In this document: in pieces, positions 3,120 through 14,709 of the stretch
Layout of the letters: every line of letters begins with the position of its first letter
Numbering within the stretch: position 1 is the stretch's first letter
Sequence record: NC_028999.1
Strand: one strand, 5' to 3'
DNA length: 64,000 nt
Position numbers and translations under genes: made by a program
Notes under the pieces: model-generated
What the model was told of the DNA's origin: nothing
Database searches by the model: none
Seen by the model: the letters and a program-made list of their open reading frames with translations, nothing else

Positions 3120-4446
3120 TTACTTCTTACTGGGTTTGAATAAGGGACTTGGCAAGAAACGCGTATGGATGAACGTCTTATTCAACATCGTCTATAATGC
3201 TAACGAAGGTCCTGAATACACGCTCAAGCCTTATTTCAAAGATGATCAGATGTACTTCTACAAGGAAGGCGATTCGAATGACGTTATCGAGTACATCGAA
3301 GATTATATCCCAAACCGAGCCCCATTGCATTTTCGGGATGAATTCATTTTACAACCAGGGGAGATCGCCAATTACAAAGGCACCGAACCCCTACGCACCA
3401 CCTACGGCAATGTCTTTGCCAACCACCTAATCCTGGTTGAAGCCTTCGGTGATCTGTTCCCCTTCCAAGCGGGTAAGTTCGATCCGGCTAAACTGGAAGA
3501 CCAAATCCTCGAACGCATGATTGATGACCGTGAAGATGGTGATGTCACTACCATGGCTGGTGACGGAAAACTGTATGTTTGGCAGTACCTGAAATTCGCT
3601 GATGCGTGCCTAGCTATCCCCGGCTACGCCGATAGCCTCGTCACATCCGTTACCAAGAAGTCTCTGACCAGCTCTCCAGAGCGTGACGCTGTGCGTGAGA
3701 AATGGGTAAAGGATAACGCACACCGACTACATGATCCTGCGGCTATTGCAGAGCTGGGCGTCCTGATGGGTAAAGTCGATGATGAATACCTAGAAGGCGA
3801 TGAAGCCAACGAGTTCTACAAATCGAAGAAGAAACTGGCCGGCGCTCGCCGTAAAGTACACTACTTCTTTGGTGGTGAATCCCCGTTCTCCGATGGCACT
3901 ACTGTTACGTTCATCAAGAAGTCATTGGAAGAAGGTATTGATACCGACTTCATGCCGGTGATGAACAACTCGCTGCGCTTCGGTTCTTACAACCGAGGTG
4001 CACAGACAGCGATGGGTGGTGAATCCACGAAGACTATTTACCGGATGGTAGGTACTGTTCGAATCATCGAACCCGACTGCAAAACCTGGATCGGTATTCC
4101 CACAATGGTGGATGACTTCAACGCCAAAACGTTGATTGGTTATTCCTACGTTGATAAGGGACGATCTATCCTTATCGAGAAAGATGACCTGGAATCTCTC
4201 AAAGGTCGCATCATTGACATCCGTGGTCCGATGACTTGTAAGTCTGGACGGGGTGAAGGGGATGCATTGGGTAAAGGTAAGAACATCTGTGCCGTGTGTG
4301 CAGGTAAAGCACTTGCCGAAAACCCGAACGGTATCCCCGCAGCCGCAGCAGGAGTCGGTGGTAGGTTCTTGATGATCTTTATGTCAAAGATGCACAGCTC
4401 TGTTCTAAGAACCGTGCACTGGGACATGAGACGCCGTATTACCTAG
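3106..4446 (+). CDS. virion RNA polymerase beta' subunit fragment (phiKZ gp80-like)
   Basis: Start at MKLRDYF; bridge-helix-like SYNRGAQTAMGGESTK, Zn-binding Cys (CKT...TCKS...ICAVC) and trigger-loop-like GIPAAAAGVGGRFLMIFMSKMH. Confidence 0.85.
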   Translation: MKLRDYFLLGLNKGLGKKRVWMNVLFNIVYNANEGPEYTLKPYFKDDQMYFYKEGDSNDVIEYIEDYIPNRAPLHFRDEFILQPGEIANYKGTEPLRTTYGNVFANHLILVEAFGDLFPFQAGKFDPAKLEDQILERMIDDREDGDVTTMAGDGKLYVWQYLKFADACLAIPGYADSLVTSVTKKSLTSSPERDAVREKWVKDNAHRLHDPAAIAELGVLMGKVDDEYLEGDEANEFYKSKKKLAGARRKVHYFFGGESPFSDGTTVTFIKKSLEEGIDTDFMPVMNNSLRFGSYNRGAQTAMGGESTKTIYRMVGTVRIIEPDCKTWIGIPTMVDDFNAKTLIGYSYVDKGRSILIEKDDLESLKGRIIDIRGPMTCKSGRGEGDALGKGKNICAVCAGKALAENPNGIPAAAAGVGGRFLMIFMSKMHSSVLRTVHWDMRRRIT

Positions 4447-4548: not shown

Positions 4549-5742
4549 ATGCATTATCTAGATATCCCCGCAGTTAACGGTGTCCTTACGATTAGCCACG
4601 TAGCAACAGGTTCGTTTTATATGGTGTGCGCGACGAATATACGCGACGCCGCTATAAATGCTAATGGCCAACTACGCTTGGGTACTTATCAAAGTCCAAA
4701 ACTCCAAGAACTTTATCTACAATCTGACGAACTCGATTTTACGTTTATCGAAACGGCAGATAAGGAAGAGTCACGGAGTATCCGTCAAAAAGTAATGGCG
4801 GAAAACTATGGCAATGATAAGCTACTAAATCAGCAGGACTGGCCTAAGCTTACCGGAGTGTTTAAACTTGAACACTCAGCTACTGGTAAATTGATTATTG
4901 GTACCACTCAGGATATTATAAAACAGCACAGCTATCAAGCCACACTACTTCGAACTGGAAAGCATAAGTGTCCTGAGTTCCAATCTCTCTATGACCCGGA
5001 AGTTGGTACAAGTGCGTTTAAGTTCTCTTTCTCCATTTGCACTGATAAAGAAGAAGCTAAATCGGTTGCACAGGAATGGATCAAAGATGCTGTTAAACGG
5101 GGCGTTTATCTAACTGGTTCTACCGTTAAACCAGCCAAGGTTGAAGAAGTCGGTAAATTGTGCGGGGTTTATCGGATAACCTTCCCGGCTACTGGACATT
5201 TCTATATCGGTAGTAGCGGTCATGTCCGTCAGCGACTAGCTCACCACAAGAGTCGACTTAAGGCTGGGCTACACGCCAGCAGTCAAGTGCAGGAGTGCTA
5301 CAATAACAATGGTGGCGAGTATACTACCGACACCATCTATACGGATACCCGTGATGAGGCTTACGCACTGGAACAGAAGTTAATCGACTTACATCAAGTC
5401 GATCCATTGTTTTTGAACTTTGGTAGTGACGTGAAGTCGGTCGTCAAGGATCTTTGGGCTAATCCGGAATATCGTGATCGCATTATCAATGGTTCAGTTA
5501 AATCGGTTAGAGATCCAGAACGGCGAAAAGCTTACGGCGAAAAGATGAAAGCTTACTGGGCTACGCCAGAGGCTAAAGCTAAGCGCATGGGTGGGGGAAA
5601 TCCATTTGCCCGGAAAGTGAGTGTCTTTGGAATCGTATACGGCTCTATTATGGATGCGGTTCGTGCTAAAGCTTTGCCAGATGCTAAACTTCGCCAACGT
5701 TTAAAAGACCCTGAAGACAAAGAAGTCTTCTATGTTAGCTGA
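4549..5742 (+). CDS. free-standing GIY-YIG homing endonuclease with three tandem GIY-YIG modules
   Basis: GVLTI..FYMV, GVFKL..LIIG and GVYRI..FYIG..RQRL..LEQ; basic C-terminal DNA-binding region. Confidence 0.85.
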   Translation: MHYLDIPAVNGVLTISHVATGSFYMVCATNIRDAAINANGQLRLGTYQSPKLQELYLQSDELDFTFIETADKEESRSIRQKVMAENYGNDKLLNQQDWPKLTGVFKLEHSATGKLIIGTTQDIIKQHSYQATLLRTGKHKCPEFQSLYDPEVGTSAFKFSFSICTDKEEAKSVAQEWIKDAVKRGVYLTGSTVKPAKVEEVGKLCGVYRITFPATGHFYIGSSGHVRQRLAHHKSRLKAGLHASSQVQECYNNNGGEYTTDTIYTDTRDEAYALEQKLIDLHQVDPLFLNFGSDVKSVVKDLWANPEYRDRIINGSVKSVRDPERRKAYGEKMKAYWATPEAKAKRMGGGNPFARKVSVFGIVYGSIMDAVRAKALPDAKLRQRLKDPEDKEVFYVS

Positions 5743-7130: not shown

Positions 7131-7164
7131 GCAATCCTATGTTACGTAATTGATGGTGAATACC

Positions 7165-8700
7165 ATGTTTGAATTATTGCTAGGTGCTAGATTAGCTAGA
7201 CCTCCATTGGTTGATAACCGCTTTATCGGAGAAGTAAGTCCTTCTTCGTTTATTACCGCAAGCGCTTTGGCTAGTGCAGTCGGCCTATTAGCTGGAGCAA
7301 ACGTTAATGATGCTATCCCATGGTTACAATTTCGTTTTAATGGCAAGGACTATTACACCCCCAAAAAAGCCATTCGACACACAATTAGCTGGGAAGCATT
7401 AAATTCGGCGAGTCTGATCACTGGGAATAAACTAACCAAAATTGCCTCTAAGTTTTATTCGGTTAGGTTGTTTAAAGGAGCTAGCGTTAATCCGGTAACG
7501 GTTACGAGTGGTTATGACCTGGTACAGTTCCAAGGTTCAGAATGGAACAAATTCATGTACCATATCCACGGCCCTAGCTTCGCTAACCCAAGCAACACAA
7601 TGGCATCTGAACCCCTTGCTGGTGAGTGGGCTCAATACAGTGATGCTGACTTGGGTTTAGGGTATCCCGCTGATGGTGGCGCCGCTACATGGACACAAGA
7701 ACTCTACACCAAATCTGGTGATGCTACTAAGTATGCCGTGTGGCGCGGATACAATGGTGTGTCTTACTGTGGTTATGACGTATCTAACCTGGCGAGTCAG
7801 AGTTATGCTGGATGGCGCCCATTGTTGGAGCAAGTGGCCGATACATTCAAACCGACTGTCAAGACCATCGCTAGTGAAGCGATGGGTAATGGTTGCTGGT
7901 TTGTTTGGAACAACGACATTTATTTCGCTGGCGGTAACGGGTCTCAACAAACCGCAAGGATTATAAAAGTAGATAAGACAACCGGTGCCAGGACGGCTGT
8001 TCCTGTTGGCACGGGGTCTACACCGGCAGCGACATGGTACTGGTCATGTGCAGTTATTGGAGATAAGGTATATTTCTTTGGCGGTCAATCAGCTGCTGGT
8101 TCTGCAAACGCAGCTCAAAATGCCTGTGTGTTCGATATGGTGACACAGGTATGGACCACCCTTGCAAATCTTCCTGAAAAATTATACAGGCCCCGTGTAG
8201 CGGCGATTGGTACTAAACTCTACATCTACGGTGGTGGACTGGTTACTCCTCGCGACACACTGTACGAATATGATCCACAAGGTAACACCTACGTCAAGAA
8301 AGCTCATGGCGGTGAAAACGCATCGGATACAGCTGGACTAGCTGTGACCTCAGACGGTACTTACCTGTATGCCTGTGGTGGTTACTATAATGCCATGTCT
8401 AACAAGCTGAAGCGTTATAACCCAACATCTAATACCTGGGATGTCCTCCAAGCAGCACCTGTAGCCAACTACGAGAATGGTATTGGAATAGCTGGTGACA
8501 TTCTGTTGTCGGTAGGTGGTACTGGGACCAATATGGGACAAAAGGTATACATGTACCTGTTCTCTAAAAATGCGTGGGTGGATACAGGTATAACCCTACC
8601 ACTTTCTTATGCGACGGCGTATTCAACTGTTCTGAATATAGACGGAAAATGGTACGCATTCTCCCAGCAGAATGCATCCCTTGGAGAAATTGGTGGCTGA
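7165..8700 (+). CDS. virion structural paralog with C-terminal Kelch beta-propeller (putative tail/receptor-binding)
   Basis: MFELLL start; family motifs WLQF, EWNKFMY, ADLG, GWRPLLE; Kelch repeats (YFFGG, YIYGG, YACGG, LSVGG). Confidence 0.8.
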   Translation: MFELLLGARLARPPLVDNRFIGEVSPSSFITASALASAVGLLAGANVNDAIPWLQFRFNGKDYYTPKKAIRHTISWEALNSASLITGNKLTKIASKFYSVRLFKGASVNPVTVTSGYDLVQFQGSEWNKFMYHIHGPSFANPSNTMASEPLAGEWAQYSDADLGLGYPADGGAATWTQELYTKSGDATKYAVWRGYNGVSYCGYDVSNLASQSYAGWRPLLEQVADTFKPTVKTIASEAMGNGCWFVWNNDIYFAGGNGSQQTARIIKVDKTTGARTAVPVGTGSTPAATWYWSCAVIGDKVYFFGGQSAAGSANAAQNACVFDMVTQVWTTLANLPEKLYRPRVAAIGTKLYIYGGGLVTPRDTLYEYDPQGNTYVKKAHGGENASDTAGLAVTSDGTYLYACGGYYNAMSNKLKRYNPTSNTWDVLQAAPVANYENGIGIAGDILLSVGGTGTNMGQKVYMYLFSKNAWVDTGITLPLSYATAYSTVLNIDGKWYAFSQQNASLGEIGG

Positions 8701-8701
8701 T

Positions 8702-9337
8702 ATGATGGAATCAATATTGGGGACCATTGCGTCACCAGGTGACAACTTAGTACCAGGTCCCCAAGCTGTCGTAGCTGGCGACACCACCTATGGATATTAC
8801 GGGGAATTCTCTGGTGGCCTTCCGCAACCACAAGCATTGTGTGATCTAGTGAATGCCACTGAAGGCGGCTTACTGGTTACGTCAACGACATGGTTGAAGT
8901 TCTGCGATGGCGGTAAGATCTACTTCATGACCAAGGTTCCGATTAGGAATAACATGCGGTGGTCTGAGCTGGACGCCAAAGGCCTCGTTACCGGTAAACA
9001 AATTACAATCGGCAAGCATACGTACATCTGTCGTATCATGACCGGCATTGCAGATAAGGCCGCTGGCACAGCGGGTGGAGAATGGAACCGCTGGATGTAT
9101 CCATTGTGTACTACCCGACCCAGTGGCCCAGTTTGGGCTAACTTCACAGTAACGCAATTGGGCGTCACATCGACCACTAATGGTGGTGGTGCTAACTGGG
9201 TACAAGAAGAACAAACCTCTGCTCCTGCTTATCACTACTACCGGGGATTTACGGGTATTGCAGTGGTGGGTAAAGAGGTAAGCAATTCGAACATCGGCAA
9301 CTACGGCTGGCGTCCAATATTGGAACTTGTAAACTGA
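8702..9337 (+). CDS. virion structural paralog (N-domain only)
   Basis: PGPQAVVAG, GYYGE, WLKF, EWNRWMY, GWRPILE. Confidence 0.8.
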   Translation: MMESILGTIASPGDNLVPGPQAVVAGDTTYGYYGEFSGGLPQPQALCDLVNATEGGLLVTSTTWLKFCDGGKIYFMTKVPIRNNMRWSELDAKGLVTGKQITIGKHTYICRIMTGIADKAAGTAGGEWNRWMYPLCTTRPSGPVWANFTVTQLGVTSTTNGGGANWVQEEQTSAPAYHYYRGFTGIAVVGKEVSNSNIGNYGWRPILELVN

Positions 9338-9347
9338 GGAGAGAGAA

Positions 9348-10019
9348 ATGTTGGAACTAATGCTCTCTTTGGGCAAACCTATATCTATCGTTGAAGGCGA
9401 CAACGGCCCAGGTCCCACTACTTTAGTCGCTGGTACTTCCCTTGCGGGGTATTTTGGTCTGGTACCCTCCGCCAGTTTAATTGGTGGTGATGCGCTTGCT
9501 ACACTGACTGGCATGACTGCTGGTACTTTACAGAACGACACTACCCCGTGGATGAAATTTGCATACAACAACAAAGCATTGTTCATTGCACAGAAGTCTA
9601 TTCGGTATGGCATGTCGTGGGACAGCTTAAACGCAGCAGCGGTGGCTACACCAGGTAAGACGATCACCATTGGTAACTATCGCTATAAGTGTCGTCTGCT
9701 GTTGATTGCCCCGGCTGACTCAGGTAACTCTAACTCCACGTTACCTGGACGGGAATGGTCTAACCTTATTTACAACGTCTGTACGGCTGGACCCTCTACC
9801 AAGGGTTGGGCCGCATTTACTACTGCCGACCTCGGTATTGGCGGTAGCTTCAATGGTCGATATAACTGGGGTCAAGAATCCGGTACAGCAACGTCAGGTG
9901 CTGGTCGAGCAGGCGTGGGTTACACCACAATTAACAAACTCGACTTCAATGCGTCTGGTAATACCGGTACGCACATGGGATGGAGACCATGCTTGGAACT
10001 GGTTGGTAAAATAGCATAA
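9348..10019 (+). CDS. virion structural paralog (N-domain only)
   Basis: PGPTTLVAG, GYFG, WMKF, EWSNLIY, ADLG, GWRPCLE. Confidence 0.8.
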   Translation: MLELMLSLGKPISIVEGDNGPGPTTLVAGTSLAGYFGLVPSASLIGGDALATLTGMTAGTLQNDTTPWMKFAYNNKALFIAQKSIRYGMSWDSLNAAAVATPGKTITIGNYRYKCRLLLIAPADSGNSNSTLPGREWSNLIYNVCTAGPSTKGWAAFTTADLGIGGSFNGRYNWGQESGTATSGAGRAGVGYTTINKLDFNASGNTGTHMGWRPCLELVGKIA

Positions 10020-10273
10020 CGACATAAAGCCCTCCCCAAAGGGAGGGCCATTATGCTGTCTAGAAGTAACGATCGGTCGTCATGAGTAAATTCAATATTC
10101 ATATTAAGAATCTTAGAGACATCATCACTTAATGATCTAAAATTATTAATATCTATTTTTTGATTATCTAGTTTATCCCGAATTTTTATTAGATGTTCTT
10201 CTATCAATGGACCTAAGTCCCGCTTGACATTAACATCCAATACCTCATTAGAGATTTTTATCGTATGTGGCAT
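9920..10273 (-). CDS. AT-rich hypothetical protein, possibly a remnant
   Basis: The first ~70 aa look protein-like; the frame then runs through the terminator into the opposite gene. Confidence 0.4.
   Translation of the reverse strand: MPHTIKISNEVLDVNVKRDLGPLIEEHLIKIRDKLDNQKIDINNFRSLSDDVSKILNMNIEFTHDDRSLLLDSIMALPLGRALCRYAILPTSSKHGLHPMCVPVLPDALKSSLLIVV
10021..10060. terminator. stem-loop terminator (possibly bidirectional)
   Basis: GACATAAA-GCCCTCCC-CAAA-GGGAGGGC-CATTATGC. Confidence 0.75.
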
Positions 10274-10374
10274 TTTATATCTCTACTAGTATTAATTTGC
10301 AATCATAAAGATATGGCTGTGTTGTATAGAATTCAATCTTACGCATGACGTATTATAAAAGAGAGGCACACAAA

Positions 10375-11889
10375 ATGTTTGAATTATTGTTGTCTTCTGG
10401 ACTAACAAATACCCCTATATATGCTGATCCTTATCCAGGTCCTAAAACACTAATAGCCGGAACAAGGGAATTGGGTTTATATGGTGAAACGTCGTCATCT
10501 GAATTATTTGGATATGACGATGCTGCTAAATTAGTTAATATGACATTTGGTACAGTTATTAATGAAGGGCAACCATGGTTAAAATTTTCCAATAACCATA
10601 TTACCTGCTACATTCCAAAAATGCCTGTACGTAAATCTATACAGAAATCACGTCTAAATAGTGCTGGTTTACGTAATGGTGATTATGAAGTTAGATTTAT
10701 GGGTAATATCTATAAATTTGGTTTATTAACAATGGTTGGTGCCGCATCTGAATGGCAAAGGTTATTATACAATGTCCATGTGTCTAATCTTAACGGAGCA
10801 AACTGGCCATATAAATTTACTGATAATGAATTAGGTATAAACCAAGCTGTTGCTGGTGGTATAAGTACTGATGGTACAACTAACTGGGGAAGAGATGCGG
10901 GTGCTAACCCATCTATTGACCAAATATATCGCGGCTATTATGCAATTGATGTAACTAGTGCATCTAGTAGTGAAACTGGTGCTGTTACGCAAGGATGGCG
11001 TCCAGTTATTTATGCAAGTGGCACGTATCCATTTGTTAAGAACAATGTTATTAAAATTGCTAATTTTGAAACAGATACCGAAATGGTAGCAGGTGCACAG
11101 ATTGGTAATTTGGTTTATTACTATGGCGGCAAAAATACAGCTAACTCTAACTTACGTATTTTAAATTTAGATACAGGTAAGTTAACAGTATTACAACCTA
11201 ATGGAACCCCTATAGCTGTTAAGCAATGTTCGGCAACAGCATTTAATGGGAAAGTATATTTTTATGGTGGCGAAAGTTCTACCGCTAATGTACTTACTAA
11301 AGACATGCAGTGTTATGACCCAGCTACTAATACATGGGAAATAAAATCACCAGGTACTATCACATGTCGTTATGCACGCTCCACTAGTCTTAACGGTTTA
11401 ATTTATATAATGGGTGCTGCCGATAATAATGCTACTAGTAATCGTGGATTCACATTGATTTATAATCCAGTTACTGATGCATATACCAGTGGAACACCAT
11501 TTAATGATACCGGTACTTATACACAAGACTATTCAGTAGGTGTGTATAATAATAGTGTATGTGTTATAGGTGGTATGGTTGGGACTGGTGTCAACACTGG
11601 CATTATCTCTTATAATCAGACTAACAATAATTGGTCTAAACCAATAACCACGGGTATACCTCTTGGTTCAGCAATTAATATACGACCAACTGGTGAACTG
11701 TATGTGATTGCAGGTGAGAACCAAAATAATGCACCAATTAAGTATTATGAGCCACGTTTATCACGTTGGATAAATTTAGGTAGTTTAGAAAATGGTCTGA
11801 TAGATTCTGGTTTTGCTAATACGTTTAATAACGCTGGTAAGTTATATGTTCTAAATGGTAATCAAGATTCAAAATACCAAGTTAGTTAA
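10375..11889 (+). CDS. AT-rich virion structural paralog with Kelch propeller
   Basis: MFELLL start, PGPKTLIAG, WLKF, EWQRLLY, GWRP; Kelch repeats (YYYGG, YFYGG, VIGG). Confidence 0.8.
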   Translation: MFELLLSSGLTNTPIYADPYPGPKTLIAGTRELGLYGETSSSELFGYDDAAKLVNMTFGTVINEGQPWLKFSNNHITCYIPKMPVRKSIQKSRLNSAGLRNGDYEVRFMGNIYKFGLLTMVGAASEWQRLLYNVHVSNLNGANWPYKFTDNELGINQAVAGGISTDGTTNWGRDAGANPSIDQIYRGYYAIDVTSASSSETGAVTQGWRPVIYASGTYPFVKNNVIKIANFETDTEMVAGAQIGNLVYYYGGKNTANSNLRILNLDTGKLTVLQPNGTPIAVKQCSATAFNGKVYFYGGESSTANVLTKDMQCYDPATNTWEIKSPGTITCRYARSTSLNGLIYIMGAADNNATSNRGFTLIYNPVTDAYTSGTPFNDTGTYTQDYSVGVYNNSVCVIGGMVGTGVNTGIISYNQTNNNWSKPITTGIPLGSAINIRPTGELYVIAGENQNNAPIKYYEPRLSRWINLGSLENGLIDSGFANTFNNAGKLYVLNGNQDSKYQVS

Positions 11890-11893
11890 CGAA

Positions 11894-11926
11894 ATAAACC
11901 CTCCCATTATGGGAGGGTTTTATGTC
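11894..11926. terminator. bidirectional terminator between convergent genes
   Basis: AAACCCTCCC-ATTAT-GGGAGGGTTT. Confidence 0.75.
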
Positions 11927-11936
11927 AATGATTATT

Positions 11937-12305
11937 TTAGTAACCCTCATTCAACAGATCGGATAATGCTCTAGCTTGAGAAATATCAGTGGAAGCAAAT
12001 ACGTCAGAAAGATAATAATCATGATCTTTTGCATTCTGACGTAATTCATTCATTAGTTGTTTATTGGATACAGCCCAAATTCTCCATAAGTCTTTATAGT
12101 CCTCATACTTAGGATTATACCCATCTAATGGAGGTTTACCTTTCCCTGCTTTCCAATTATTGGAATGTATTCTGTATCCTTTACAGTCTAATTGCCAAGC
12201 TTCCTCAATCGTTCGTCCATCCGGTAGCCGAGCAAACAGGGCAGAGAATCGTTTGTCGCCAACGGAGGAACATTCGTATCCTCCGCGACGCTTCCACCGA
12301 TACAT
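11937..12305 (-). CDS. NADAR-like (DarG1-type) ADP-ribosylhydrolase, putative
   Basis: ECSS..FSAL..TIEEAWQ..K and LSDVFASTDISQARA parallel the DarG1 motifs EISS..LSAFN..TVESAFQ and FTDIEF..SINCQARA. Confidence 0.65.
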   Translation of the reverse strand: MYRWKRRGGYECSSVGDKRFSALFARLPDGRTIEEAWQLDCKGYRIHSNNWKAGKGKPPLDGYNPKYEDYKDLWRIWAVSNKQLMNELRQNAKDHDYYLSDVFASTDISQARALSDLLNEGY

Positions 12306-12541
12306 TACTTTGGGGGTTGAGTTTCCTTGTGTTTTAGGTAAGCTGCCAGCATGTTATCCAGTTTGGCACCTTTCATGATCTTCTGTGCAATTTCGATACC
12401 GTTGACTCGACCCCCTGTCAGGTTCACACCCACTTCACGACGATCATGTTCAGAGATGTCTTTCATTGCCGAGAACTCCATGACGGTAGTCTCACGAGCA
12501 ATGTTCAGAATCTGACTCACGTTCGGATACGTACTTACAAT
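12305..12541 (-). CDS. polB: split family-B DNA polymerase (phiKZ gp82-like), exon 2
   Basis: Begins IVSTYPNVSQILNIARETT; joined to exon 1 it gives motif A DLDIVSTYPN. Confidence 0.85.
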   Translation of the reverse strand: MVSTYPNVSQILNIARETTVMEFSAMKDISEHDRREVGVNLTGGRVNGIEIAQKIMKGAKLDNMLAAYLKHKETQPPK

Positions 12542-12885
12542 CCATACCTTCGATAGAGTTCGTTATGCTCTACCCGCGTTTACACGCTGCTCCAGGCTTT
12601 CCCTGGATGTGGAGACTATATCACCATCCTTCTCTTTCGAGGATCGGATGCTTCCTATTTCCACCCACTTGGATGTACTCCCTTACGGGATAGTCGTTGA
12701 ACGTTCTTCTCAGAGAGAAGCTTCGCTGCGGATTGCCCAATACATGTGTCTTTTACCATACCCAGTGAGTTAGACTGGCCATCTAGTATATCGCTATCTA
12801 GACTTGGTGCACATGTCTCTAAGGATTTCCCCGTCAATTAAAGAAGTTTGCATCAAGTGTTCCAACTTGATGGGACTAATATTTA
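12542..12885 (-). ncRNA. group I intron (IA2-like), ORF-less, 344 nt
   Basis: U|UAA 5' splice site with P1 U.G pair; Q AAUCCGCAGC, R GUUCAACGACUA, S GAUAUAGUC; P7.1/P7.2 helices; terminal G; splicing restores the reading frame. Confidence 0.9.
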
Positions 12886-14709
12886 ATCCAGATCAGCCAC
12901 GTGCGTAAACAAAAGTGTGTTGTAGTCGGGTAAGTCTTTGACACACTTCAGTCCGTTGGGTCCAGCCATGTACGAAGGCAGGGTAACGATCCAGGAATCG
13001 TGGCCAACAACATAGCTATCAAGATCATGAACCATCTGATCAGAGCTTGAACCAATTACACAGGGTTCAGGCCGCTTGAGATACCAGAAGTGCATGTCGT
13101 CGCACAGACGTTTCGGGTTAGAACTAAAGTTCTTGTAGTCCGAAGATTTCGAGAACAGAGTAATAGACGAAGCCAGGTCATTAATCTTTTCATCGAGTTG
13201 TTCCAGTCGAATGGAGTCGATGATGTTGTAAAGACCGTACCGGACTTTGTGGTTCTTCTGCATCTCAATGTGCCATTCGATACCTCCCAAGTAGTCAGTT
13301 TCAGCGAACTTCAGTTTACCAAAGTTCAGGCGCATCCCCACACCAAACCCAGGATGTACGTTGACACCCCAGACCAGCGAATCAACTTCTTCCCAGTGTT
13401 CTTCTCGTTCGACCTTTTCCTCACGGCGGTACTCGACTTGAACCCTCGGATCTTCCGGATCAATACCTTCTTGTAGCAGCTTCTCCTGAGCTGCGGTATA
13501 AACAGGGACATCGTTGTACGTGACGTCTACCTTATCCTTGCTCGGATCGTTGACCGACCAATATGGGTGGGCACCACTACGTTCAGCGATGGCTTTACCC
13601 ATCTTCTTCATCCAGCTGTTGAATTCCTCTTCAGTCTGAACAGTTTCCTGTTCATCCATGGAGAGTTCTTTCTTCAGGATGGCATCGAGGGCATAACTGG
13701 ATTCTTTACCTTTGGCCAATCGAGTTACACGATACGTGGCCATGGAGTCAATGCACTGGAACGACGCAGGTGCAGTAATCCAATGCCATTGGTCTTCTGG
13801 ACCTTTGGACTTGGTTACACCCGATGCCGTAGTGGTCATCGCTTGGTCTTGACGGTAATGGAAATACCGATAGTTCGGAGGAACTTGAGGATCACTGAAT
13901 ACGTTCTTCGGGTCAATGCCGTAGTTTTCCAGTGTGGTCAAGATTCGACTCATGTCGAAGTCGATATTCCAGAACGCGAAGAAGTCAGGCTTCCACTTGT
14001 GCAAACGACGCATGCAGTTGATGATGATATCAGCAGGCGAATTTACTACCTCAATTTCAATATTGAGATTACGTGCTTTTTTCAGAGTCACCAATTCTGG
14101 AATGCGTTCTAATTCGGCGAAGGTTTCGGCAACTGGGTCATCCAGATCTTTCACCCAATGCTTCAGATATGCCAGATACACGTTTTCCTTGTGTGTAACC
14201 GACATGCAGATAATCTGTCCCTCGTTCTCTTCTTCGTACACGTTGGTCTCGATGTCGCCACCGGCTACCGTGTTACGGGAAATAAGTTCCGGGTATTGCT
14301 CCCGGTAGTCGTTTTTGAGACAGCAGACTGAGCTTACGTCCGAACCGTACAGATAAGGGCTACGGCTCAATTGGCGCATACGTGGGTTAGGACCCATTGA
14401 GTAATCGCCTAACAACTTAGCGATCATACGTGGCATCTCCAGTTGAGTACAGGTGTACTTCTGGAGGTTACGTTCAAATTCGTAATCTTTCTTTTCTTTA
14501 TGATTTTGTCTTCCCTTCTGTGTAATCCAGAAGGGACGTTTGTAGTCTTCAACGACCCGAATACGTGGGATACGACGTTTGTCTTTAAGGTGAATGATTT
14601 CTTTGACTACGTGTGCATCATGCCTACGGCCAGTTTGGTCAGTCACATAAGTGATGTGTTTGGCTTCAATACCAACAACATCTTCTTTTGTAAATTGTAG
14701 GTCGGACAT
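12886..14709 (-). CDS. polB: split family-B DNA polymerase, 3'-5' exonuclease part (phiKZ gp82-like), exon 1
   Basis: ExoI DIET, ExoII WNIDFD, ExoIII YNIIDS; ends HVADLD at the intron; spliced product about 686 aa. Confidence 0.88.

What the first reader, a model, noticed from the sequence alone, without database searches (positions are those of the whole stretch)
11937..12305. Orphan DarG1-like NADAR translationally coupled to the DNA polymerase
The 122-aa protein aligns by eye with DarG1-type NADAR motifs: ECSS, FSAL, TIEEAWQ..K, and SDVF..ISQARA containing the presumptive catalytic Asp. Its ATG overlaps the TAA of polB exon 2. DarT1 ADP-ribosylates guanine in ssDNA and blocks phage replication, and orphan antitoxin-like NADARs counter it in T4-like phages. 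A minimal NADAR co-expressed with the polymerase would be a replication-linked counter-defence, and its translation could depend on intron splicing.
Basis: partly seen in the sequence, partly recalled or inferred. Interest (0 to 1): 0.72.

Follow-up and report, generated by a model that had tools for sequence, protein, structure and literature searches.

The report
Frameshift-fused extra domain on phage polymerase
The small gene after the DNA polymerase gene of jumbo phage PhiPA3 is real and highly conserved, but it is not a demonstrable NADAR enzyme; it is most likely read as an extra tail domain of the polymerase, because ribosomes slip back one base at a conserved slippery site just before the polymerase stop codon.

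Summary
The window is Pseudomonas phage PhiPA3. The ORF at 11937-12305 (-) is gp084. The quoted strings, the TAATG overlap with the polB stop and the group I intron in polB are all there.

NADAR membership is not supported. There is no Pfam, NCBIfam or PDB sequence match, and hhalign against AdfN-type NADAR alignments gives probability below 1%. Foldseek finds no PDB match. It gives only weak matches to viral NADAR models (TM up to 0.59), although the order of secondary-structure elements resembles a shortened NADAR. No DarT gene was seen near any homologue.

The gene belongs to a large uncharacterised family (866 cluster representatives). Members stand alone or are fused to DUF4326, SLOG, DUF488, RNase H and helicase domains.

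New result: polB ends C_CCA_AAG_TAA, a known shift-prone -1 heptamer, and gp084 lies in the -1 frame. All 15 related loci with this frame relation carry C_CCA_AAG, G_GGA_AAG or A_AAA_AAG at the junction. Thirteen of them have no start codon, phiKZ-type phages and Phabio included. One relative encodes the polymerase and the domain as a single ORF.

Best reading: a programmed -1 frameshift makes a PolB-gp084 fusion after intron splicing. The domain's chemistry is unknown; ADP-ribose or adduct removal from DNA is one candidate.

The parts
11937..12305 (-). gp084 reading frame: 122 codons plus TAA. It encodes a ~120-aa alpha+beta domain of an uncharacterised family (PHROG 9995). It has an ATG in PhiPA3, but the frame is also open in the -1 frame of polB from the slippery site onward.
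12308..12314 (-). C_CCA_AAG, a -1 slippery heptamer (X_XXY_YYZ) in the polB zero frame, directly followed by the polB stop codon.
   Evidence: shift-prone heptamers listed in PMC5009743
12305..12307 (-). polB stop codon TAA. Its last base is the A of the gp084 ATG.
12305..12541 (-). polB exon 2 (78 codons plus stop).
12542..12885 (-). Group I intron in polB, 344 nt, with no ORF for a homing enzyme. It begins with an in-frame TAA and ends in G.
12886..14709 (-). polB exon 1 (608 codons), the phiKZ-type family B DNA polymerase (PhiPA3 gp085).
11896..11920 (-). Intrinsic-terminator-like hairpin with a T-rich tail, 17 nt after the gp084 stop. It marks the end of the polB-gp084 unit and lies between the convergent genes 083 and 084.
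   Evidence: the weak Rfam Phe_leader match is this hairpin

Best explanation
gp084 is a conserved, enzyme-like ~120-aa domain. In PhiPA3 and its relatives it is made mainly as a C-terminal extension of the replicative family B DNA polymerase.

Proposed steps: (1) the group I intron is spliced, joining exon 1 to exon 2; (2) ribosomes translate polB to the last two sense codons, which form the heptamer C_CCA_AAG with the stop codon next in the A site; (3) a fraction of ribosomes slips back one base and reads on through one linker codon and the 122 gp084 codons. This gives an 809-residue PolB-gp084 isoform beside the 686-residue PolB. In PhiPA3 the ATG could also yield some free gp084.

The domain itself probably processes an adduct or modification on DNA or nucleotides at the replication fork. 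Removal of ADP-ribose-type adducts by a shortened NADAR-like active site is one candidate chemistry.

Shown: the gene, its conservation, the heptamer and its covariation, the missing start codons in relatives, the natural in-frame fusion, and the fusion partners. Inferred: the frameshift event, its share of products, and every statement about biochemical function.
For: Junction in PhiPA3: the zero frame ends C_CCA_AAG_TAA and gp084 is in the -1 frame, open from the heptamer.

Comparative evidence:
- Of 80 IMG/VR loci with a homologue, 23 have phiKZ-type polB directly upstream.
- All 15 of those with the homologue in the -1 frame carry a zero-frame X_XXA_AAG heptamer at the head of the homology, after the last -1-frame stop. 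These are C_CCA_AAG (6), G_GGA_AAG (1) and A_AAA_AAG (8).
- These are the three heptamers named as highly shift-prone in E. coli (PMC5009743).
- In 9,731 zero-frame polB codons there are 17 X_XXA_AAG heptamers, and 15 of them are at the junction.
- The codon before the heptamer encodes P, N, S, V, A or L, but its third base always matches the next two bases (C with CCA, G with GGA).
- Only 2 of the 15 have a canonical start codon at the head. phiKZ-type phages have ATA there and Phabio has GTA. By contrast, 37 of 57 loci without polB have their own start and 18 are embedded in longer ORFs.
- The start-less phiKZ-type copy is under purifying selection (34 synonymous against 10 non-synonymous differences in codons 1-84, no stops).
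- P0223, from a contig with a PhiKZ_MCP neighbour, is a single 698-aa ORF with the polymerase at residues 29-531 and the domain at 558-677.
- Two further loci have the domain in frame behind a single TAG.

Enzyme-like character: about 20 positions are 97-100% conserved in 337 distinct sequences, among them E11, S13, D17, E34, Q38, K42, K55, Y70, D101 and Q110. The AlphaFold model has pLDDT 97.

Context: the domain is fused to DUF4326 (18 of 75 mid-size members), SLOG families, DUF488-N3a, RNase H, an AlkB-like oxygenase and PIF1-type helicase. These are the partners reported for Macro and NADAR domains (PMC9503650 and PMC7824862).
Against: There is no protein-level evidence for the fusion. No conserved RNA structure lies downstream of the heptamer, so the only candidate stimulator in the C_CCA_AAG class is the adjacent stop codon. 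PhiPA3 itself has an ATG overlapping the stop, so free gp084 made by reinitiation cannot be excluded there. Six related loci have the gene in the +1 frame, overlapping polB by 19-22 nt, some with GTG or TTG; this shows that a separate product, or a different recoding event, also exists. The 15 loci are related phages, not independent samples. The function rests on context only. The NADAR similarity is not statistically significant in any test.
Confidence: 0.55

Rival explanations
1. Stand-alone gp084 made by termination-reinitiation. Ribosomes finishing polB at TAA restart at the overlapping ATG. No fusion protein is made in PhiPA3, and the heptamer is incidental.
For: There is a TAATG overlap, and no Shine-Dalgarno sequence at a usable distance: AAGGA lies about 17-23 nt upstream. 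Stand-alone homologues with their own ATG are the commonest form outside the polB context (37 of 57 loci). 201phi2-1 has a GTG 12 nt after the polB stop.
Against: The start codon is not conserved. The equivalent codon is ATA, ACA, ACT, GTT or GTA in relatives whose 122-codon frame is intact and under selection. The heptamer is kept at synonymous positions and switches between three shift-prone forms. A natural in-frame fusion exists.
Confidence: 0.2
2. gp084 is a true, minimal member of the NADAR superfamily and acts as an orphan DarG1-like antitoxin that removes DarT1 guanine-ADP-ribose from phage DNA.
For: The order of secondary-structure elements is the same as in an AdfN-orthologue model, minus a central helix-helix-hairpin insert. 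An invariant Glu, Gln and Lys lie on the equivalent helix and an invariant Asp on the equivalent late strand. Eight proteins named NADAR, and one more named like YbiA, are among 46 weak BFVD matches, with TM 0.42-0.59 normalised to the query. True NADAR pairs gave 0.55-0.67 in the control. The fusion partners are shared with NADAR domains. hhalign places helices 67-93 and strand 98-100 on the matching NADAR elements, with P=0.066.
Against: Nothing is significant: Pfam, NCBIfam and PDB profile searches are empty for NADAR, hhalign probability is at most 0.8%, and Foldseek E-values are at least 0.9. The Glu-Lys spacing is x7, not x6. There is no N-terminal basic extension, since the protein starts at the first strand. 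No DarT or ART gene was found in 131 neighbouring ORFs of 17 bacterial loci or in the phage contexts. The NADAR alignments I could build cover only the AdfN-like clade.
Confidence: 0.15
3. The domain is a non-catalytic accessory of the polymerase, for example a DNA- or partner-binding module, rather than an enzyme.
For: It is attached to polymerases, helicases, RNase H and DprA-like modules, all of which handle DNA. A divergent copy sits directly upstream of a different DNA polymerase gene in Rhizobium phage RHph_Y5A.
Against: The invariant set is dominated by acidic and polar residues (E11, D17, E34, D101, S13, S21, Q38, Q110). That pattern is typical of an active site, not of a basic DNA-binding surface. 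Sequence conservation of 50-60% between jumbo phages, N4-like phages and cyanobacterial giant proteins is unusually high for an adaptor.
Confidence: 0.12
4. The junction pattern is a by-product of coding constraints, and the start-less copies are decaying pseudogenes.
For: The loci are phylogenetically related. The polB C-terminus often ends in Pro-Lys.
Against: Synonymous differences dominate and there are no stops in start-less copies. Three different heptamers occur at different distances from the stop. Fifteen of 17 X_XXA_AAG sites in 9,731 codons lie at the junction.
Confidence: 0.03

Closest known systems
NADAR / YbiA-like ADP-ribosyl-DNA glycohydrolases (DarG1 antitoxin; T4 AdfN = gp30.3; Pfam PF08719 and PF08010)
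   Same: It is a small alpha+beta domain with the same order of elements: strand, short helix, hairpin with Asp-Gly, a helix carrying Glu/Gln/Lys, two long helices, a strand carrying an acid or His, and a last helix. It occurs in phages and is fused to SLOG and DUF4326 modules.
   Different: There is no significant sequence, profile or Foldseek match. The domain is about 30-45 residues shorter and lacks the central helix-helix-hairpin. The Glu-Lys spacing is one residue longer. There is no DarT partner and no N-terminal extension.
dnaX tau/gamma programmed -1 frameshift (A_AAA_AAG) in the E. coli replicase
   Same: A replication protein gene yields two isoforms by -1 slippage on a Lys-codon heptamer. 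The same heptamer is used in eight of the related phage loci.
   Different: In dnaX the shift truncates the protein and is driven by an upstream SD-like element and a downstream stem-loop. Here the shift would extend the protein by a whole domain. In the C_CCA_AAG class the only visible stimulator is the adjacent stop codon.
Phage tail assembly chaperone G/GT-type -1 frameshift (G_GGA_AAG in lambda)
   Same: A conserved -1 frameshift near the end of an ORF adds a C-terminal domain encoded by the overlapping downstream ORF, which lacks its own conserved start. Slippery sequences vary between lineages while the arrangement is kept.
   Different: Here it is a replication gene, not a morphogenesis gene. 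The downstream domain also exists widely as a free protein and in giant multidomain proteins.
AdfM (PhiPA3 gp108, phiKZ gp104): macrodomain anti-DarT2 factor of nucleus-forming phages (PMC13309987)
   Same: It is from the same phage and shows that ADP-ribosylation of DNA is a real threat inside the phage nucleus.
   Different: It has a different fold, is a different gene and is experimentally characterised. It says nothing direct about gp084.
Modules of phage and conjugative-element polyvalent proteins in the NAD/ADP-ribose network (SLOG, DUF4326, DUF488, Macro, NADAR)
   Same: The gp084 domain occurs inside 1,000-6,000-aa proteins and in two-domain fusions with these modules.
   Different: The domain has no Pfam model, and I found no description of it in the papers I could search.

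Membership tests
NADAR superfamily (PF08719 / PF08010) | Significant match to the family profiles or to solved NADAR sequences | tested here: not met
   Pfam at E<=1 gave nothing and NCBIfam nothing. The phmmer and profile searches of PDB returned no NADAR, whereas the AdfN-clade profile finds YbiA 2b3w at E=0.0011. hhalign probability was 0.1-0.8%. The AdfN HMM with filters off found nothing in 267 family proteins.
NADAR superfamily | YbiA-like fold: a helical core flanked by two small beta-sheets | tested here: inconclusive
   The model (pLDDT 97) has the same order of elements as the AdfN-orthologue model but lacks H47-66 and the 76-85 hairpin. Foldseek against PDB found no NADAR, though only 2,000 candidates were aligned. 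BFVD NADAR models matched at TM 0.42-0.59, E 0.9-8. Control: the AdfN model against 2b3w, 8bau and 8bat gave TM 0.67, 0.56 and 0.55 at E 9e-5 to 0.23.
NADAR superfamily | Catalytic Glu-x6-Lys pair on the first core helix (E88/K95 in E. coli C7 NADAR; E36/K43 in T4 AdfN) | tested here: not met
   gp084 has invariant E34, Q38 and K42, which is Glu-x7-Lys. AdfN-clade invariants are E36, Q40 and K43. The residues are defined in PMC11543638 and PMC11257639. The residue types and the helix are the same, but the register differs by one.
DarT1-associated NADAR (DarG1-type antitoxin) | N-terminal basic extension, a catalytic Asp two residues before the superfamily Glu, and a conserved extra Lys | tested here: not met
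   The protein starts at strand 1, so there is no extension. A single invariant acid, D101, lies on the equivalent strand. No position-by-position equivalence could be established.
DarT1-associated NADAR (DarG1-type antitoxin) | Relatives encoded next to a DarT1 toxin gene | tested here: not met
   No DarT or ART family appeared among 131 neighbouring ORFs of 17 bacterial-genome loci. None appeared in the phage and metagenome contexts either.
NADAR superfamily | ADP-ribosyl (N-glycosidic) hydrolase activity | not testable with these tools
   No biochemical data were found for PhiPA3 gp084, phiKZ 082.1 or 201phi2-1 gp143.
Programmed -1 ribosomal frameshift site | X_XXY_YYZ heptamer in the zero frame, with the downstream ORF in the -1 frame and open from the site | tested here: met
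   C_CCA_AAG lies at 12314-12308 (-), and the -1 frame is open from 48 nt upstream of the ATG.
Programmed -1 ribosomal frameshift site | Conservation of slipperiness, not of amino acids, across relatives | tested here: met
   All 15 of 15 -1-frame loci have it. Three heptamer types occur. The third base of the preceding codon covaries with the heptamer. Fifteen of 17 X_XXA_AAG sites in 9,731 polB codons are at the junction.
Programmed -1 ribosomal frameshift site | The downstream ORF lacks its own conserved initiation codon | tested here: met
   Thirteen of 15 loci have no ATG, GTG or TTG at the head. phiKZ has ATA and Phabio has GTA. PhiPA3 itself does have an ATG.
Programmed -1 ribosomal frameshift site | A stimulatory element: downstream structure, upstream SD-like sequence or adjacent stop codon | tested here: inconclusive
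   There is no conserved downstream helix (4 pairs, no covariation; z=-0.66). The stop codon follows the heptamer at once in 6 of 7 C_CCA_AAG / G_GGA_AAG IMG/VR loci. An AAGGA lies 9 nt upstream in PhiPA3 but is not conserved.
Programmed -1 ribosomal frameshift site | Detection of the trans-frame protein | not testable with these tools
   No proteomic data were available. Indirect support comes from the natural single-ORF fusion P0223.
Group I intron | Match to the covariance model, a U before the 5' splice site paired with G in P1, a terminal G, and an exon junction that restores the conserved protein | tested here: met
   RF00028 scored 71.7 bits against a gathering score of 50. P1 and the terminal G were read from the sequence. 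The intron-less phiKZ, PS119XW and Phabio polymerases align without a gap across 12886|12541.

The most novel reading that the evidence does not exclude
phiKZ-like nucleus-forming phages make two isoforms of their replicative DNA polymerase by a conserved -1 frameshift. The longer isoform carries a previously undescribed catalytic domain, either a stripped-down NADAR relative or a new fold. This domain would remove ADP-ribose or a similar bulky adduct from template DNA at the fork, a polymerase-tethered counter-defence inside the phage nucleus.
Probability: 0.2. Interest if true: 0.85.

Novelty: new variant of a known kind. Interest (0 to 1): 0.7.

Why it matters
phiKZ and PhiPA3 are the model nucleus-forming jumbo phages, yet their replisome is poorly described. 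In phiKZ-type genome records this gene is annotated only as a 38-codon fragment, because gene callers find no start codon.

A conserved recoding event at the end of polB would mean that the polymerase exists in two forms, one carrying an extra conserved domain. It would add a replication-gene example to bacterial and phage frameshifting, alongside dnaX and the tail chaperones.

The domain is one of the more widespread unnamed modules of phage and mobile-element multidomain proteins (866 cluster representatives). It keeps company with NAD/ADP-ribose-network and DNA-processing domains. Settling its structure and ligand would annotate hundreds of proteins. It would also test whether ADP-ribosylation of DNA is countered directly at the fork.

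Tried and rejected
- Pfam, NCBIfam and PADLOC scans of gp084 found nothing useful. A PglZ hit at E=0.032 and a PLC-beta_C hit on exon 2 are taken as chance.
- The PDB profile search gave eukaryotic uL3 at E=0.0038 as best hit. This is a Lys-rich helical stretch with no supporting evidence, so I rejected it.
- The Rfam Phe_leader match at 11866-11926 (27 bits against a gathering score of 55) is the terminator hairpin.
- The Rfam 3' end of the intron (12590) leaves an in-frame stop before exon 2. The boundary was corrected to 12542 with intron-less relatives.
- hhalign against three successively larger NADAR alignments, in local, global and low-mact modes, was never significant. The forced long alignment places the N-terminal halves differently from my element-by-element mapping, so neither mapping is reliable there.
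- The AdfN HMM against all family proteins found nothing.
- I could not obtain a canonical PF08719 alignment. The third homologue search and the viral scan both stayed inside the AdfN-like clade.
- The search for a downstream frameshift-stimulating structure was negative.
- Literature searches for phiKZ 082.1, and for 'slippery' together with 'phiKZ', found nothing. The Burroughs and Aravind paper on the rhodanese-phosphatase superfamily is not held.
Full report
**Identity of the region.** The window is Pseudomonas phage PhiPA3 (NC_028999.1; window coordinate = record coordinate minus 62,000), matched at 100% identity over 3.5 kb. The ORF of the finding, 11937..12305 on the minus strand, is gp084, annotated 'hypothetical protein, similar to gp143 of 201phi2-1'. 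The gene upstream on the same strand is gp085, DNA polymerase.

**The observation.**
- The ORF and its translation are as described.
- The four quoted strings are present.
- The ATG at 12305-12303 shares its A with the TAA at 12307-12305.
- The 71-codon ORF ending at that TAA matches positions 505-571 of the 576-position PHROG 3011 DNA polymerase profile. The 608-codon ORF at 12883..14709 matches positions 3-496.
- Rfam finds a group I intron between them (RF00028, 71.7 bits, E=4e-17).

**Splice model.**
- The Rfam 3' end (12590) cannot be the splice site, because the exon 2 frame has a TAA just downstream of it.
- The intron-less polymerases of phiKZ, PS119XW and Phabio align without a gap from window 12886 directly to 12541 (residues 562/563, 570/571 and 595/596).
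- Exon 1 is therefore 14709..12886, the intron 12885..12542 (344 nt) and exon 2 12541..12305.
- The sequence agrees. The last exon 1 base is a U that can pair with G in P1, the intron begins with an in-frame TAA, and it ends in G.
- Spliced PolB has 686 residues.

**What gp084 is by sequence.**
- It matches no Pfam, NCBIfam or PDB sequence.
- In PHROGs it is family 9995, function unknown. A 38-residue PHROG (33573) matches only its last 38 residues.
- It has 307 homologues at 50-80% identity, none with a Pfam domain.
- An exhaustive profile search finds 866 cluster representatives at E<=1e-3.
- In 337 distinct domain sequences about twenty positions are 97-100% conserved, including E11, S13, G16, D17, S21, E34, Q38, K42, K55, Y70, W74, D101, Q110 and A111. 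This pattern looks like an active site.

**Where the domain occurs.**
- Among the 147 best representatives beyond those already found, 32 are up to 200 aa, 58 are 201-400 aa, 33 are 401-2,500 aa and 24 exceed 2,500 aa.
- Pfam partners in the 75 mid-size proteins are DUF4326 (18), YAcAr (5), cpYpsA (2), DprA-like (2), DUF488-N3a (2), RNase H (2), an AlkB-like oxygenase (1) and guanylate kinase (1). One protein adds a PIF1-type helicase and a SprT-like region.
- Only 17 loci were found in 185,579 species genomes, several of them inside 1,100-3,000-aa proteins of cyanobacteria. Their neighbours again include SLOG, DUF4326, DUF488, RNase H, SF1 helicase and nucleotide-metabolism genes, and no DarT or ART family.
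[quoted passage not shown] The gp084 domain therefore sits in the same company as NADAR.

**Is it a NADAR? Sequence tests.**
- I fetched the T2 orthologue of T4 AdfN (gp30.3) by a primer printed in PMC11257639.
- I confirmed it as PF08010 and collected two sets of relatives, some also hitting PF08719.
- Profile-profile comparison with the gp084 family gave probabilities of 0.1-0.4%.
- With enlarged alignments on both sides it gave 0.8%, P=0.066. The local alignment covers gp084 residues 67-110 against NADAR 92-128.
- The AdfN-clade profile detects E. coli YbiA (2b3w) at E=0.0011. The gp084 profile does not.
- NADAR catalysis depends on a Glu-x6-Lys pair conserved across the superfamily. DarT1-associated members add an Asp, a Lys and a basic N-terminal extension (PMC11543638; E36/K43 in AdfN).
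- gp084 has invariant E34, Q38 and K42, one residue further apart, and no N-terminal extension.

**Is it a NADAR? Structure tests.**
- The AlphaFold model is very confident (pLDDT 97.3, pTM 0.90).
- Foldseek against PDB found nothing (best E=1.2, TM below 0.22), although only 2,000 candidates were aligned.
- Against BFVD, four family members matched strongly. A weak tail followed (E 0.8-9). In it, eight proteins are named NADAR, one 'swarming motility protein' (a name I know as an annotation of YbiA), and nine DUF4326.
- The NADAR matches have TM 0.42-0.59 normalised to the query; the DUF4326 matches have about 0.3.
- As a control I modelled an AdfN orthologue (pLDDT 94) and searched PDB. YbiA, the Phytophthora NADAR and the Geobacter DarG1 NADAR came back at E 9e-5, 0.011 and 0.23, with TM 0.67, 0.56 and 0.55. 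Genuine NADAR pairs thus score in the TM range that gp084 reaches with viral NADAR models, but gp084 never reaches a significant E-value.
- The order of elements agrees. In AdfN it is: strand 3-5, short helix 14-17, hairpin 25-32, helix 35-41, then helices 47-66 and hairpin 76-85, helices 89-105 and 107-114, strand 120-122, helix 138-151.
- In gp084 it is: strand 3-5, short helix near 18-20, bridge residues 26 and 32 around Asp-Gly, helix 33-41, a loop, helices 67-80 and 82-93, strand 98-100, helix 110-119.
- My judgement: membership is not shown and two defining features fail. A remote, pared-down NADAR-like fold remains possible.

**The junction with polB: the main new result.**
- I compared the junction in relatives to see whether the TAATG overlap is conserved. 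The start codon is not conserved, but a slippery heptamer is.
- In PhiPA3 the polB zero frame ends C_CCA_AAG_TAA (12314..12305), and gp084 is in the -1 frame, open from the heptamer.
- phiKZ, Phabio, PS119XW and 201phi2-1 have the same heptamer. The codon at the head of the conserved frame is ATA in phiKZ and GTA in Phabio.
- In phiKZ-type records only a 38-codon internal fragment is annotated, or nothing. This explains PHROG 33573.
- Among 80 IMG/VR loci with a homologue, 23 have phiKZ-type polB directly upstream.
- In 15 of these the homologue is in the -1 frame. Every one has a zero-frame X_XXA_AAG heptamer at the head of the homology, downstream of the last -1-frame stop.
- The heptamers are C_CCA_AAG in six loci (the stop follows at once in five, after one codon in 201phi2-1), G_GGA_AAG in one (the stop follows at once), and A_AAA_AAG in eight, where the polB frame runs on for 24-96 nt.
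- Atkins et al. (PMC5009743) name exactly these three as highly shift-prone in E. coli.
- The codon before the heptamer encodes Pro, Asn, Ser, Val, Ala or Leu, but its third base always matches the next two bases.
- In 9,731 zero-frame polB codons there are 43 X_XXY_YYZ heptamers, 17 of them X_XXA_AAG. Fifteen of those 17 are the junction sites.
- Only two of the 15 have a canonical start at the head (PhiPA3 ATG, 201phi2-1 GTG). Of the 57 loci without polB, 37 have their own start and 18 are embedded in longer ORFs.
- The start-less phiKZ-type copy differs from PhiPA3 by 34 synonymous and 10 non-synonymous codons in codons 1-84 and has no stop.
- P0223, from a contig whose neighbour is a PhiKZ-type major capsid protein, is a single 698-residue ORF with the polymerase at 29-531 and the gp084 domain at 558-677.
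- Two loci (L106, L108) have the domain in the polB frame behind a single TAG, without a start.
- Six loci have it in the +1 frame, overlapping polB by 19-22 nt, with a conserved GAA_AAG_AAG and a non-conserved first codon. I could not decide between their own GTG/TTG starts and another recoding event.

**What this implies.**
- The simplest account of these facts is a programmed -1 frameshift that appends the domain to PolB, giving 809 residues against 686.
- In the C_CCA_AAG class the stop codon in the A site is the only visible stimulator. I found no conserved downstream structure.
- The heptamer lies in exon 2, so the fusion requires the intron to be spliced. In unspliced RNA the zero frame stops at the first intron codon.
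- PhiPA3's ATG is one of several residues found at that position and may be incidental. Reinitiation giving some free gp084 cannot be excluded.
- A terminator-like hairpin follows the gp084 stop at 11920-11896.

**Function.**
- Nothing here measures activity.
- The invariant polar residues, the fusion to the replicative polymerase, and the partners elsewhere (RNase H, helicases, AlkB-like, DprA-like and SLOG, DUF4326, DUF488) suggest an enzyme that processes an adduct or modification on DNA or nucleotides.
- Supporting this, the gene lies in the early region of N4-like phages and near thymidylate synthase and deaminase genes in other large phages.
- ADP-ribose removal is one candidate, given the NADAR-like topology and company.
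- PhiPA3 already has a proven macrodomain anti-DarT2 factor, gp108, which works in the phage nucleus (PMC13309987). I found no report of DarTG1 tested against these phages.

**Novelty.** No paper in the searchable library mentions phiKZ together with 'slippery', or gene 082.1. The mechanism type is well known. Its use to add a domain to a phage DNA polymerase, and the domain itself, appear undescribed.

- In my private reasoning, before tool-derived alignments were available, I loosely recalled short motif patterns of NADAR/YbiA and DUF4326 from memory. I also spelled out a few residues on either side of the proposed frameshift.
- None of these letters was used as a query, saved or printed by a script, or used as evidence.
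- All motif statements in this report come from alignments A1 and A3 and from papers.
- No trans-frame sequence is written here.

Noticed in passing
L005 3501-3869 (phiKZ) and phiKZ-type records; PHROG 33573: In phiKZ-type genomes the 122-codon frame is intact (87% identical to PhiPA3), but it is annotated only as a 38-codon fragment (PHIKZ082.1) or split into small 'hypothetical proteins', because there is no start codon at its head. PHROG 33573 (38 aa) is this fragment.
   Followed up: yes
L044, L047, L048, L049, L052, L057 (Psa21/RVTF4-type phages; also L034, L036), about 3480-3525: The homologue lies in the +1 frame of polB and overlaps it by 19-22 nt. GAA_AAG_AAG is conserved in the polB frame just before the head. 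The first codon varies (TTG, GTG, CTG, ACG, AGT), and L044 has no canonical start codon at the head. This may be a -2 or +1 recoding site, or weak independent starts.
   Followed up: partly
L106 and L108, 3150-3875: The gp084 homologue is in the same frame as polB exon 2, separated by a single TAG, with no start codon. This suggests stop-codon readthrough or TAG reassignment. In these contigs polB is also interrupted at the same position as the PhiPA3 intron.
   Followed up: partly
L002 3065-6730 (phage HPP-Temi): polB is annotated in two pieces with an HNH endonuclease gene between them. polB of this phage group is therefore a recurrent target of mobile insertions. The PhiPA3 intron carries no endonuclease ORF.
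   Followed up: no
L118 2501-2776 (Rhizobium phage RHph_Y5A): An unannotated, divergent homologue (38% identity) lies directly upstream of a different DNA polymerase gene. This is a second, independent association of the domain with a polymerase.
   Followed up: no
window 7150-11889 (+): There is a run of four paralogous virion structural genes (PhiPA3 080-083, Kelch-like) that share an N-terminal region. Gene 083 is convergent with gp084 and shares the hairpin at 11896-11920.
   Followed up: no
(PDB profile search): The family profile gives a borderline match (E=0.0038) to residues 91-185 of eukaryotic ribosomal protein uL3, repeated more weakly in many uL3 orthologues. It is probably compositional.
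   Followed up: no
window about 4549-5742 (record 66549-67742): PhiPA3 gene 078 is annotated as an endonuclease similar to a site-specific DNA endonuclease of a green alga. It is possibly another mobile-element remnant near the RNA polymerase and structural genes.
   Followed up: no
rank 11: PhiPA3 gp174 (F8SK47) appears among the weak structural matches (TM 0.31 over 60 columns), next to DUF4326 proteins. It might be a DUF4326-like protein of the same phage.
   Followed up: no
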